Shown here: one piece after another, positions 36,084 to 38,857 of the stretch | Layout: every line of letters begins with the position of its first letter | Position numbering within the stretch: position 1 is the first letter of the stretch | Source of the DNA: Iphione sp. A-MEVVRFRX5 | Lineage: Eukaryota | Reading direction: 5' to 3' | DNA: 64,000 nt | NCBI GenBank assembly: GCA_976226885.1 | Contig: OZ320316.1 | Coordinates: forward strand, 94,922,001 to 94,986,000 | The notes under the pieces: generated by a model | What the model saw: the letters and a program-made list of their open reading frames with translations, nothing else | Database searches by the model: none | What the model was told of the DNA's origin: nothing | Made by a program: the position numbers and the translations under genes

Positions 36084-36201
36084 AGAAGGTTGAGGGCAGA
36101 GAAAGGGGAACAAAGTAGGAAGGAAGGAGGGGGTGACAAAAAGAAAGAGTGAAATGGAGAGAAAGAGGCTGAGGAAGAGAAAGAGAAAGAGAACATAGAG
36201 C

Positions 36202-36246
<45 letters not shown>
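36084..36246 (+). repeat. Left arm of an inverted repeat pair (about 122 bp purine-rich unique sequence + (GA)~21)
   Basis: Reverse complement of 38674-38857, with only 3 differences in the non-microsatellite part. Confidence 0.95.
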
Positions 36247-36250
<4 letters not shown>

Positions 36251-37184
36251 TACACTGCACCATTCGATAATAAATGGTGAGGCACTTCCTGTATTCACAG
36301 AGGAAAACGTCAGTCCACACACAACGGCATGTGAACATACATTATTCTCCCCATGACTGCTTACACGCGAGGGTGCGTGCAGGCCAATGAATCGTACTGA
36401 GCGCAGGGGGAGCGTGAGTGAAAAGTGATGGGTGGGAGGGGGTAATGATATGAGGGAGGGTTTAGTAAAATGGGAAAGATTGTCGGGAGACGGGTAGACA
36501 GTGATGGTGAGAGAGGAGAGGGAAGCGTGAAATAAAAGAAAGCAAAATACAACTTTAGAGTGAAAAAAAAGAAAGAGAGGGTAGCTTTTATTATACATAT
36601 ACATGTAGGCGTGGAACTCGTGTAGCCACCGAAAACGTCACTAGAAGAAAGGCAAACGGAGGGAAAACCGGAGTATGGAAGAAAAGCATGAATAAAACAT
36701 ATGAGAGATACCTGTACACGTCGCTGTATAAATGCCTTTTTTACGCGTCTAAACGCAGCACACGCCAGACCAGTAGGCAACCATTGCGAACCGTTGCACA
36801 ATTGCGAATTGTTAGTAGTATATAAAAGAGAGTTTTCCCCAGGCATTTTAGACGCGATGTAGGCAGGTTACATAATGCAGCAGACCTGTACCAACCCGTT
36901 CCATTTTGAATGAAGTGTTTTTGAAAGGTATTAGAGTTATATTTTCGAATTAAAGGAGCGTGTTTAGCCTCAAACTCTCCGGCACTGTTTTCCCTAAAAC
37001 TTTTCTATGGACAGAATAGCCAGACAAGTATCCACCTCGGAACGTACTGCTACAGACCTATTGAAGCCCCAGGCTACTCCTTTTACAGCTAAGTCCCACG
37101 ATGATCACCGTGGACGCACCTGGGTGGCTTTCCTCTGCAAAGTGCACGCTGTTCACCGCATCATTTGTGTTTATAATTTATCCC

Positions 37185-37330
37185 ACCTCACGTGGGGTAC
37201 GGGCCATGCTGTTCGTGACGTCACTCCACACTACCCAATCACAGCACCGGTCAGGGGTCAACCAAACCAGGCCAGCCAATCAGGGTTCAGGAGGCCGTCG
37301 CCCGCCGGTCTCGCCCAGAGCCGGGCAAGG
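37185..37330 (+). promoter_or_regulatory. Promoter-like region: E-box, CRE, two CCAAT boxes
   Basis: CACGTG 37189, GTGACGTCAC 37215-37224, CCAAT 37235 and 37276, leading into a CpG-rich stretch. Confidence 0.6.
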
Positions 37331-37692
37331 AGAATAAACAAAACCGGCAGTGGAGTTGGGGCGAATGTGATTCAGAGGTCGTTAGAGCACATTTTGCACG
37401 AAACAGTGGACTTGTGACACACAGACATCGACTGCGGAATGTCCCGCCCGCAGACTGGAGTTTATTCTGGAAGCGGACGCGATCGCGACGTGGAGTTAAC
37501 GTTCGTTTAGTGCCAGGAGTCCGCAAGAAGCGGGGCGCGGAGAGGGAAGCGCACTGTTGTGTTGGTAGCGCTATCGCCAGTTTCACCGTACTTGGGTGTG
37601 TGCAGCGCCTATCACCTCTCCCAGCACCTCCTGCACCATCACCACCACCAGCACCGCCACCATCGCTCCTACCAGCCAGCAGACAGAAACAG
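37330..37692 (+). other. Candidate non-coding first exon of an unidentified transcript (start approximate)
   Basis: CpG-rich sequence downstream of the CCAAT/CRE promoter, ending in a consensus donor CAG|GTAAGT at 37693. The only short ATG ORF I noted is MSRPQTGVYSGSGRDRDVELTFV*. Confidence 0.5.
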
Positions 37693-38564
37693 GTAAGTGA
37701 TACCAGATGTGTTTTAAATGCAGCGTCCAACGCATGCTTTGTTTACCCTTGGTGCATTTTTACGCGTTGTAGACGACGTACGCACATGTGTTATACATGT
37801 TACAAGAAGCTCAAACCGTACGTCATTCCGACCCAAAGAATATGCTGTCTACACATGCACCAGTAAGGACAAGGATAACATATTGGGCTTGTCATTGTTT
37901 GCTAACATTATTCGTTGTTGTGTTTTTCTTTTATTCTCTCTTTATCGCACCCCCCGCTGATGAGAATGCATGCATTCATAAGTGTCAGTGGTGCACAGGG
38001 CTTTGACTAGGTGGGAGGGTGGTTGGATGGGTGGGTGGGTGTGTTGCTTAGGATGGGGTGATTTTCCCAGGACCTGACCTGTGGGGTTAGAGGGAAAGGC
38101 GGAGGATGGTAGCGAGGCAGCTGGGAGTAGTACAGTTTATGTTGGGTCAGATAGGAAAAAGTCTTTTTTTCCCCCCAAAAGAATTACCTTTGAAGTAGAA
38201 GAACTAAAAATCGTACATAGAAGCCGTGTTACGGCTGATATGGGTCATGCAGGTTTCTCTTTTATAGTAAATTTTCAATGTTATCGCGGTGAACTACCAA
38301 CATTTATATGGACAATTTATCAGTGTGCTAATTCTGTTATTACTGTTCGCATAGAATCCGTTCGTCAGTGCGGGCCACAAGTGAAAAAAAACAACAAAGA
38401 GGGGAGGGATAGTTTTGCCAATGTATCTGAATGAACATGTCAAATCAAATGTACCTCCGACAAACTCACTCACATTCACATACACACGTACGCACACGCA
38501 CGCACGCACGCACAGACAATACCAACGGACCAATACCACCGTGACCATCCTGGGCCCCTTTCAG

Positions 38565-38578
38565 GTTGCCATGGTAAC
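38565..38578. promoter_or_regulatory. RFX X-box GTTGCCATGGTAAC
   Basis: Full match to the GTYNCCATRGYNAC consensus, about 870 bp into the putative first intron. Confidence 0.7.
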
Positions 38579-38672
38579 TCTTGCACTTGGATGGAATAAT
38601 GTGCATCATAATGTTTGCAGCGTTCTCATTTTTCGCATTTTGGTCATTTTACTCCATGTAGCTTAACTGGGT

Positions 38673-38673
<1 letters not shown>

Positions 38674-38738
<65 letters not shown>

Positions 38739-38857
38739 GCTCTATGCTCTCTTTCTCTTCCTCTTCCTCAGCCTCTTTCTCTCCATTTCACTCTTTCTTT
38801 TTGTCACCCCCTCCTTCCTTCCTACTTTGTTTCCCCTTTCTCTGCCCTCAACCTTCT
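38674..38857 (-). repeat. Right arm of the inverted repeat pair ((TC)~31 + about 123 bp unique)
   Basis: Reverse complement of 36084-36246. Confidence 0.95.

What the first reader, a model, noticed from the sequence alone, without database searches (positions are those of the whole stretch)
36084..38857. Promoter + first exon + perfect X-box enclosed by a young inverted repeat pair (possible invertible or mobilised promoter cassette)
Seen: arms 36084-36246 and 38674-38857 are reverse complements with 3 differences over ~122 unique bp, and (GA)n/(TC)n tracts face inward. The 2.4-kb interior holds the E-box/CRE/CCAAT promoter, a CpG-rich exon ending CAG|GTAAGT and GTTGCCATGGTAAC. Homology stops abruptly at both outer ends and I see no TSD. 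Established: inverted repeats mediate inversion of the enclosed segment, and Pack/foldback-type elements capture promoters and exons. Inference: a segregating promoter inversion (flipping would aim the promoter toward the CEP170 3' end as antisense), a captured promoter, two independent insertions of a (GA)n-tailed repeat, or an assembly artefact.
Basis: partly seen in the sequence, partly recalled or inferred. Interest (0 to 1): 0.7.

Follow-up and report, generated by a model that had tools for sequence, protein, structure and literature searches.

The report
Two-copy inverted duplication around a promoter
A conserved promoter-like stretch next to a centrosome gene is flanked by two mirror-image copies of a 122-base purine-rich sequence ending in GA repeats; the copies are real, occur nowhere else in the genome and look like a by-product of DNA repair, not a jumping gene, and nothing yet shows that the stretch flips.

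Summary
Arms 36080/36084-36246 and 38674-38857/38861 are reverse complements. They differ by 2 substitutions and 1 indel over about 122 unique bases, and pure (GA)20-21 and (TC)31 tracts face inward.

The arm is not a dispersed repeat. The 1.18-Gb assembly holds exactly these two copies. The 2.4-kb interior and both flanks are single-copy, and there is no target-site duplication.

The only related species with retrievable DNA is collinear through the CEP170-like gene. It keeps the interior's promoter-like block (a 24-mer, E-box, CRE, two CCAAT boxes and a forkhead-like 13-mer) in the same order and orientation. It also keeps an X-box downstream, but it has no arms. So the interior is ancestral and in place, and the arms are lineage-specific.

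This refutes a captured or mobilised cassette and two retroposon insertions. My best reading is a local inverted templated duplication primed between oppositely oriented GA/TC microsatellites. That mechanism is inferred.

The arms are short (longest perfect block 71 bp), so flipping would be rare at best. The exon, its gene and the direction of transcription remain unverified.

This is an ordinary structural feature of modest interest. The scan's index lists this same stretch once more (s1-325204, first-reader note only); no note on other DNA describes the same thing.

The parts
36016..36083 (+). Degenerate GA-rich tract just outside the left arm. Proposed remnant of an older GA microsatellite.
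   Evidence: TRF 36032-36086, period 2, 72% matches. Purine fraction 0.7-0.9. Similar degenerate GA tracts are common genome-wide.
36084..36204 (+). Left arm, unique purine-rich part (121 nt; alignment can extend to 36080 with one mismatch).
   Evidence: Only two copies in the genome.
36205..36246 (+). Pure (GA)20-21 tract at the inner end of the left arm.
37162..37344 (.). Conserved promoter-like block: 24-mer 37162-37185, E-box 37189-37194, CRE 37216-37223, CCAAT 37235-37239 and 37276-37280, forkhead-like GAATAAACAAAAC 37332-37344. Direction of transcription not established.
   Evidence: Collinear blastn match to the relative: 33 nt at 94% (E 4e-6) and 146 nt at 64% (E 2e-8). Alignment with motif islands identical. 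Coordinates.
37345..37692 (+). Putative non-coding first exon (CpG o/e 1.2-1.3 at 37300-37600) ending CAG|GTAAGT. Unverified.
   Evidence: Sequence. Donor at 37690-37698 and CpG profile. No RNA evidence. Not alignable to the relative beyond the promoter block.
38565..38578 (.). Palindromic RFX-type X-box GTTGCCATGGTAAC, 96 nt inside the right arm.
   Evidence: Pattern search: 6 strand-matches in the window against 0.38 expected. The relative has GTTGTCATGGTAAC at the corresponding place, L027:9680-9693, in otherwise unalignable sequence.
38674..38735 (+). Pure (CT)31 tract at the inner end of the right arm.
38736..38857 (-). Right arm, unique part (122 nt, pyrimidine-rich on the + strand; alignment can extend to 38861).
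   Evidence: The pyrimidine-rich composition stops abruptly at 38860.

Best explanation
The two arms are a lineage-specific, strictly local, two-copy inverted duplication. It is not a mobile element. It flanks an ancestral promoter-like regulatory block, with a downstream X-box, that lies where it has always lain, downstream of the CEP170-like gene.

The most likely origin is inferred. A break inside one GA/TC microsatellite was repaired by annealing to the oppositely oriented GA/TC microsatellite 2.4 kb away. Synthesis copied through that tract and about 122 nt of its flank. The new end was then joined to the other broken end by end-joining. This is an SDSA/MMBIR-type templated inverted insertion.

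I favour the right copy as donor and the left site as acceptor. The left arm is sandwiched between an older degenerate GA tract (36016-36083) and a pure (GA)20-21 tract, as expected if an old microsatellite was split by the insertion.

Today the pair is most likely neutral. It could support rare homologous inversion of the 2.4-kb block, but nothing shows that it does. The relative does without the arms, so they are not needed for the promoter.
For: Shown:
- The arms are real and about 98% identical.
- The genome holds exactly two copies; the only other hits are 79-81% GA-rich look-alikes.
- The interior and both flanks are single-copy.
- There is no TSD.
- No residual inverted similarity continues beyond the arms.
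- The relative's contig is collinear from the CEP170-like exons to the promoter block, with the same order and orientation, and keeps the X-box.
- The arm has no match in 41 kb of that contig, and no unique inverted repeat lies around the relative's promoter.
- Both inner ends lie in pure microsatellites, and the left outer flank is a degenerate GA tract.
- This is the only inverted pair of >=100 bp and >=90% identity within 10 kb in 264 kb sampled, so it is not part of a MITE-like background.

Plausibility from papers:
- Triplex-prone and other non-B microsatellites cause replication-dependent breaks and homology-guided template switches over kilobases (PMC11161834).
- Templated inverted insertions form at breaks in yeast (PMC11724301, abstract).
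Against: - The mechanism is inferred from anatomy only. The donor direction is not established.
- The outer junction shows at most 3 nt of possible overlap (AAA/TTT), which is weak evidence.
- Only one relative was available, and it is distant (50% amino-acid identity in the large CEP170-like exon). The arms could therefore be older than they look and kept alike by gene conversion.
- No reads, haplotypes or population data were available, so neither an assembly error nor an existing inversion polymorphism is excluded.
Confidence: 0.6

Rival explanations
1. Segregating or recurrent inversion: the arms recombine (NAHR) and flip the 2.4-kb promoter block. Individuals or cells would then differ in orientation, and the flip would uncouple the promoter from its gene or aim it at the CEP170-like 3' end.
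For: The pair is inverted and about 98% identical, encloses a conserved regulatory block and lies only 2.4 kb apart. Inverted repeats are known to drive recurrent inversions (PMC3961182).
Against: There is no orientation data. The assembled orientation is the ancestral one. The arms are 168-188 bp and the longest perfect block is 71 bp. The human study of repeat-mediated inversions that I read dealt with kb-scale repeats: it defined highly identical repeat regions as >=1 kb and >=97% identity and placed one likely breakpoint in a 782-bp region of 99.9% identity. No second haplotig of this region exists in the assembly.
Confidence: 0.07
2. Foldback, MITE or Pack-type DNA transposon whose terminal inverted repeats captured and moved a promoter and first exon.
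For: There are terminal inverted repeats of about 165-185 bp around a 2.4-kb interior.
Against: No TSD of more than 3 nt at any plausible boundary. No third copy of the arm in 1.18 Gb. The interior is single-copy and orthologous, at the collinear position, to the relative's promoter, which lacks arms.
Confidence: 0.03
3. Two independent insertions, in opposite orientation, of a (GA)n-tailed retroposon or other dispersed repeat.
For: Each arm has a microsatellite 'tail'.
Against: Only two copies genome-wide. No TSDs. No tRNA, 7SL or 5S-type RNA family match anywhere in the window. The weak hits elsewhere are degenerate GA tracts.
Confidence: 0.04
4. An older inverted repeat whose arms are kept nearly identical by ongoing gene conversion, so it is not a young duplication.
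For: High identity alone cannot separate youth from conversion. The only outgroup is distant.
Against: No decayed inverted similarity flanks the arms. The relative shows no trace of the arms.
Confidence: 0.12
5. Assembly artefact at a GA-rich tract: one arm does not exist in the real chromosome.
For: Long pure GA/TC tracts are hard for some sequencing chemistries (own knowledge). No reads could be examined.
Against: The arms differ by 3 changes and by 10-11 microsatellite units. All four junctions run into unique single-copy sequence. The interior's order and orientation agree with an independent species.
Confidence: 0.05

Closest known systems
Templated inverted insertions / template-switch (FoSTeS, MMBIR, SDSA-type) inverted duplications at breaks in non-B microsatellites
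   Same: The copy is local, in cis and inverted. There are only two copies and no TSD. One boundary is buried in a triplex-prone GA/TC microsatellite and the other is abrupt with at most 3 nt of overlap. Such events are described experimentally (PMC11161834; PMC11724301).
   Different: Here the event is a fixed germline one, inferred from a single assembly. The copied tract (about 122 nt plus repeat) and the 2.4-kb jump are larger than the very short (mostly about 5-34 bp) inverted insertions reported in yeast (PMC11724301 abstract). The event itself was not observed.
Polymorphic inversions mediated by inverted repeats (NAHR), e.g. the human HsInv set
   Same: A highly identical inverted pair brackets a unique segment that carries regulatory sequence.
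   Different: The arms are an order of magnitude shorter than the kb-scale repeats in that work. No second orientation has been seen.
MITE, foldback or Pack-type DNA transposons
   Same: Terminal inverted repeats around an internal segment.
   Different: No TSD, no other copies, and the interior is orthologous and in place.
RFX/X-box plus forkhead-type ciliary gene promoters
   Same: A perfect palindromic X-box that is positionally conserved in the relative. A conserved AATAAACAAAAC forkhead-like site. The neighbouring genes are centrosome/cilium genes (CEP170-like here, SDCCAG8-like about 200 kb upstream).
   Different: Binding and expression are untested, and the driven gene was not identified.

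Membership tests
TIR DNA transposon / MITE / foldback (Pack-type) | Target-site duplication flanking the terminal inverted repeats | tested here: not met
   The best direct repeat at any boundary within +/-8 nt is 3 nt.
TIR DNA transposon / MITE / foldback (Pack-type) | Several copies of the terminal repeat or element in the genome | tested here: not met
   Exactly two arm copies, both at this locus. The interior is single-copy.
TIR DNA transposon / MITE / foldback (Pack-type) | The interior was brought in from elsewhere (not orthologous at this site) | tested here: not met
   The promoter block and X-box are collinear and co-oriented in a relative that lacks the arms.
SINE / non-LTR retroposon with simple-repeat tail | Dispersed multi-copy family | tested here: not met
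   Two copies only. The other hits are 79-81% degenerate GA tracts.
SINE / non-LTR retroposon with simple-repeat tail | Head derived from tRNA, 7SL or 5S RNA | tested here: not met
   No Rfam family reaches its gathering score anywhere in the window.
Inverted-repeat-mediated (NAHR) polymorphic inversion | Highly identical inverted pair at the breakpoints | tested here: met
   97.6% identity over 168 columns.
Inverted-repeat-mediated (NAHR) polymorphic inversion | Both orientations present among haplotypes | not testable with these tools
No alternative haplotig exists in the assembly.
Inverted-repeat-mediated (NAHR) polymorphic inversion | Repeat length in the range documented to drive recurrent inversion (about 1 kb or more) | tested here: not met
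   The arms are 168-188 bp and the longest perfect block is 71 bp. The cited work dealt with kb-scale repeats.
Templated inverted insertion / template-switch duplication | Donor and copy close together in cis, inverted, two copies only, no TSD | tested here: met
Templated inverted insertion / template-switch duplication | Homology or microhomology at the junctions | tested here: inconclusive
   The inner junction lies inside complementary GA/TC microsatellites. The outer junction has at most a 3-nt AAA/TTT overlap.
Templated inverted insertion / template-switch duplication | One copy absent in an outgroup | tested here: inconclusive
   Both arms are absent from the one available relative, which is distant. 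This shows lineage specificity but does not show which copy is new.
RFX X-box regulatory site | Match to GTHNYY-AT-RRNAAC, more frequent than chance, at a conserved position | tested here: met
   6 strand-matches against 0.38 expected. The relative has one at the corresponding place.
RFX X-box regulatory site | Bound by RFX and needed for expression | not testable with these tools
   Needs ChIP or reporter assays.

The most novel reading that the evidence does not exclude
The short inverted pair makes this conserved, X-box-linked promoter block a natural flip switch in an animal genome. Rare germline or somatic NAHR between the arms would invert the 2.4 kb, silencing the downstream transcript and possibly producing antisense transcription into the CEP170-like 3' end. 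Both orientations would segregate in the population.
Probability: 0.05. Interest if true: 0.7.

Novelty: new member of a known kind. Interest (0 to 1): 0.27.

Why it matters
This is a clean, datable example of how a non-B GA/TC microsatellite can seed a low-copy inverted duplication around a functional promoter. Structures like this are the raw material for later inversions. If population long reads showed both orientations, it would be a rare case of an invertible promoter in an animal. As it stands, it is a structural curiosity with no demonstrated function. It mainly warns that an inverted repeat around a promoter need not be a mobile cassette.

Tried and rejected
- Same-species contigs: exact look-ups of two spurious ORFs, one spanning the left arm (36014-36604, -) and one in the interior (37414-37863, +), found nothing.
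- Second relative: P0002's contig has no retrievable DNA. P0003's contig (12.9 kb) is too short to reach the region, so I did not fetch it.
- Identity of the driven gene: not resolved.
  - No conserved coding exon lies within 10 kb downstream in the relative.
  - No convincing exon lies in window 39-64 kb.
  - The 100 kb further downstream holds a Maverick/Polinton-like element, and the first clear + strand coding hit is a Ras-family exon about 87 kb away.
  - Guesses from human synteny: the SDCCAG8-like gene lies about 200 kb upstream on the other side, and the PLD3/4/5-like gene is on another chromosome.
- Taxon: the protein atlas gave only weak, uninformative hits.
- Rfam: nothing in the window.
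Exons were searched separately, by reference only.

Full report
**Observation**

The stretch was read directly. The repeat finder reports one long inverted pair: 36102-36246 / 38694-38838, 145 nt, 97% complementary, 2447 nt apart. MAFFT, a sensitive self-blastn and a pairwise alignment place the homology as follows:
- Left arm: 36084 (36080 with one mismatch) to 36246.
- Right arm: 38674 to 38857 (38861).
- Identity: 168 aligned columns at 97.6%.
- Differences in the unique ~122 nt: one A indel and two A/G substitutions.
- Perfect blocks: 25, 71, 12 and 53 nt.
- Inward tracts: pure (GA)20-21 on the left and (CT)31 on the right.

The outer ends are abrupt. A scan of all boundaries within +/-8 nt finds no direct repeat longer than 3 nt, so there is no TSD. 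No weaker inverted similarity continues into the interior.

**Copy number**

- A DNA search of the window's own 1.18-Gb assembly with the 121-nt unique part finds the two arms (100% and 98%) and only two weak hits at 79-81%. On inspection these are degenerate GA-rich tracts.
- A 34-mer shared by both arms, allowing 3 mismatches, occurs once forward and once reverse, both here.
- A 32-mer spanning the indel occurs once.
- The 2.4-kb interior and 1.5 kb of each flank are single-copy apart from low-complexity hits.
- In 264 kb sampled (the window, 100 kb downstream and ten random 10-kb pieces), this is the only inverted pair of >=100 bp and >=90% identity within 10 kb.

The arm is therefore not a dispersed repeat, and the genome is not littered with such pairs.

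**Comparison with a relative**

The large CEP170-like exon (17489-19891) finds a 657-aa product at 50% identity on a 1.99-Mb ENA contig. Three look-ups walked 41 kb along that contig (L025, L026, L027).

- The contig is collinear with the window from 14 kb to 45 kb.
- At the collinear position and in the same orientation it carries the interior's promoter-like block. These are identical or nearly so, while the spacers have diverged:
  - a 24-mer (window 37162-37185);
  - an E-box;
  - GTGACGTCAC (CRE);
  - two CCAAT boxes;
  - GAATAAACAAAAC.
- About 0.8 kb downstream the relative has GTTGTCATGGTAAC, matching the window's GTTGCCATGGTAAC at 38565-38578, in otherwise unalignable sequence.
- The arm has no match in the relative's 41 kb.
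- The relative's promoter is flanked only by AT microsatellites and a (CCT)n tract, with no unique inverted repeat.

The interior is thus ancestral and in place, the assembled orientation is the ancestral one, and the arms arose in the window's lineage.

**What this excludes**

- A Pack/foldback-type captured cassette fails on TSD, on copy number and on orthology of the interior.
- Two insertions of a (GA)n-tailed retroposon fail on copy number and TSD, and no small-RNA-derived head is detectable.
- An assembly artefact cannot be formally excluded without reads. It is unlikely, because the arms differ at three positions and by about ten repeat units, and every junction runs into unique sequence.

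**Most likely origin (inference)**

Both inner ends lie in complementary, triplex-prone GA/TC microsatellites. The left arm is preceded by an older, degenerate GA tract (36016-36083, 72% GA; purine fraction 0.7-0.9). The pyrimidine-rich composition of the right arm stops abruptly at 38860.

A simple model fits all of this:
- A break occurred inside an old GA microsatellite at the left site.
- Its (TC)k 3' end annealed to the oppositely oriented pure tract 2.4 kb downstream.
- Synthesis ran through that tract and about 122 nt of its flank.
- The new end was joined to the other broken end, possibly over a 3-nt AAA/TTT overlap.

The model accounts for the pure inner and degenerate outer GA tracts, the lack of a TSD, the abrupt ends and the two-copy status. 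The opposite direction (left as donor) is not excluded.

Experimental work shows that non-B microsatellites provoke breaks and homology-guided template switches over kilobases (PMC11161834). Templated inverted insertions also form at breaks (PMC11724301, abstract).

A rival I cannot exclude is an older repeat kept alike by gene conversion, because the only outgroup is distant.

**Does it flip?**

This is untested. 

The arms are 168-188 bp with a longest perfect block of 71 bp. The human study of repeat-mediated inversions that I read dealt with kb-scale repeats (PMC3961182). I put a segregating inversion at about 7% and a functional switch lower.

**The regulatory block**

The motif conservation supports a real cis-regulatory element. 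X-box matches are enriched in the window (sites at 27242, 27353, 38565 and 61655; 6 strand-matches against 0.38 expected).

A further conserved element at 45005-45112 holds a near-X-box and an ATTTGCAT-containing 23-mer.

Three things remain unverified:
- Whether 37345-37692 is a transcribed first exon.
- Which gene it serves.
- Which strand is transcribed. The conserved 24-mer contains TTTATAA, which reads TTATAAA on the minus strand and lies beyond the E-box, CRE and CCAAT boxes. A minus-strand or bidirectional start is therefore possible.

No conserved coding exon was found within 10 kb in the relative or in the rest of the window.

**Verdict**

This is a real, lineage-specific, two-copy inverted duplication around a conserved promoter-like block. 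It is best explained as a microsatellite-primed templated repair product. It is not mobile, its invertibility is unproven, and it is of modest interest. The genome is an animal genome with 12 large chromosomes. An earlier scan note calls it an invertebrate, which I did not verify.

Noticed in passing
window 27242-27255, 27353-27366, 38565-38578, 61655-61668: X-box (RFX-type) motif matches are enriched in the window: 6 strand-matches against 0.38 expected.
   Followed up: partly
window 45005-45112 (relative L027:12352-12460): A conserved non-coding element 7.8 kb downstream of the promoter block. It holds a near-X-box GTTTACATGGCAAC (45012-45025; GTTGACATGTCAAC in the relative) and an identical 23-mer AATAAATTTAAATCAATTTGCAT (45084-45106), which contains an octamer-like ATTTGCAT.
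   Followed up: partly
G000:C10:94711021-94722188 (-), about 200 kb upstream of the window (L028-L030): Exons matching Pfam CCCAP (SDCCAG8 family) lie on the opposite strand upstream of the CEP170-like gene. This recalls the human SDCCAG8/CEP170 head-to-head neighbourhood (own knowledge). The PLD3/4/5-like gene that follows CEP170 in human is on another chromosome here.
   Followed up: partly
L035-L037 (G000:C10, about 94998000-95019000; 12-33 kb beyond the window's end): An AT-rich Maverick/Polinton-like element. It has an integrase with rve and chromo domains (L036:2571-3683, -), a weak sub-threshold match to the poxvirus A32 packaging-ATPase family (L036:4528-5151, -), an 885-aa ORF and related ORFs in inverted orientation at its two ends. 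I only observed it.
   Followed up: partly
L040:453-755 (+) (G000:C10, about 95046450): A Ras-family GTPase exon (Pfam PF00071, E 3e-12) about 87 kb downstream of the promoter block on the same strand. It is a candidate for the next + strand gene, with no demonstrated link to the promoter.
   Followed up: no
window 40458-40530: A third long pure (TC)37 microsatellite lies 1.6 kb beyond the right arm. It pairs with the left (GA) tract only through the repeat itself.
   Followed up: yes
window 3013-3184: A run of 172 N inside the CEP170-like region.
   Followed up: no
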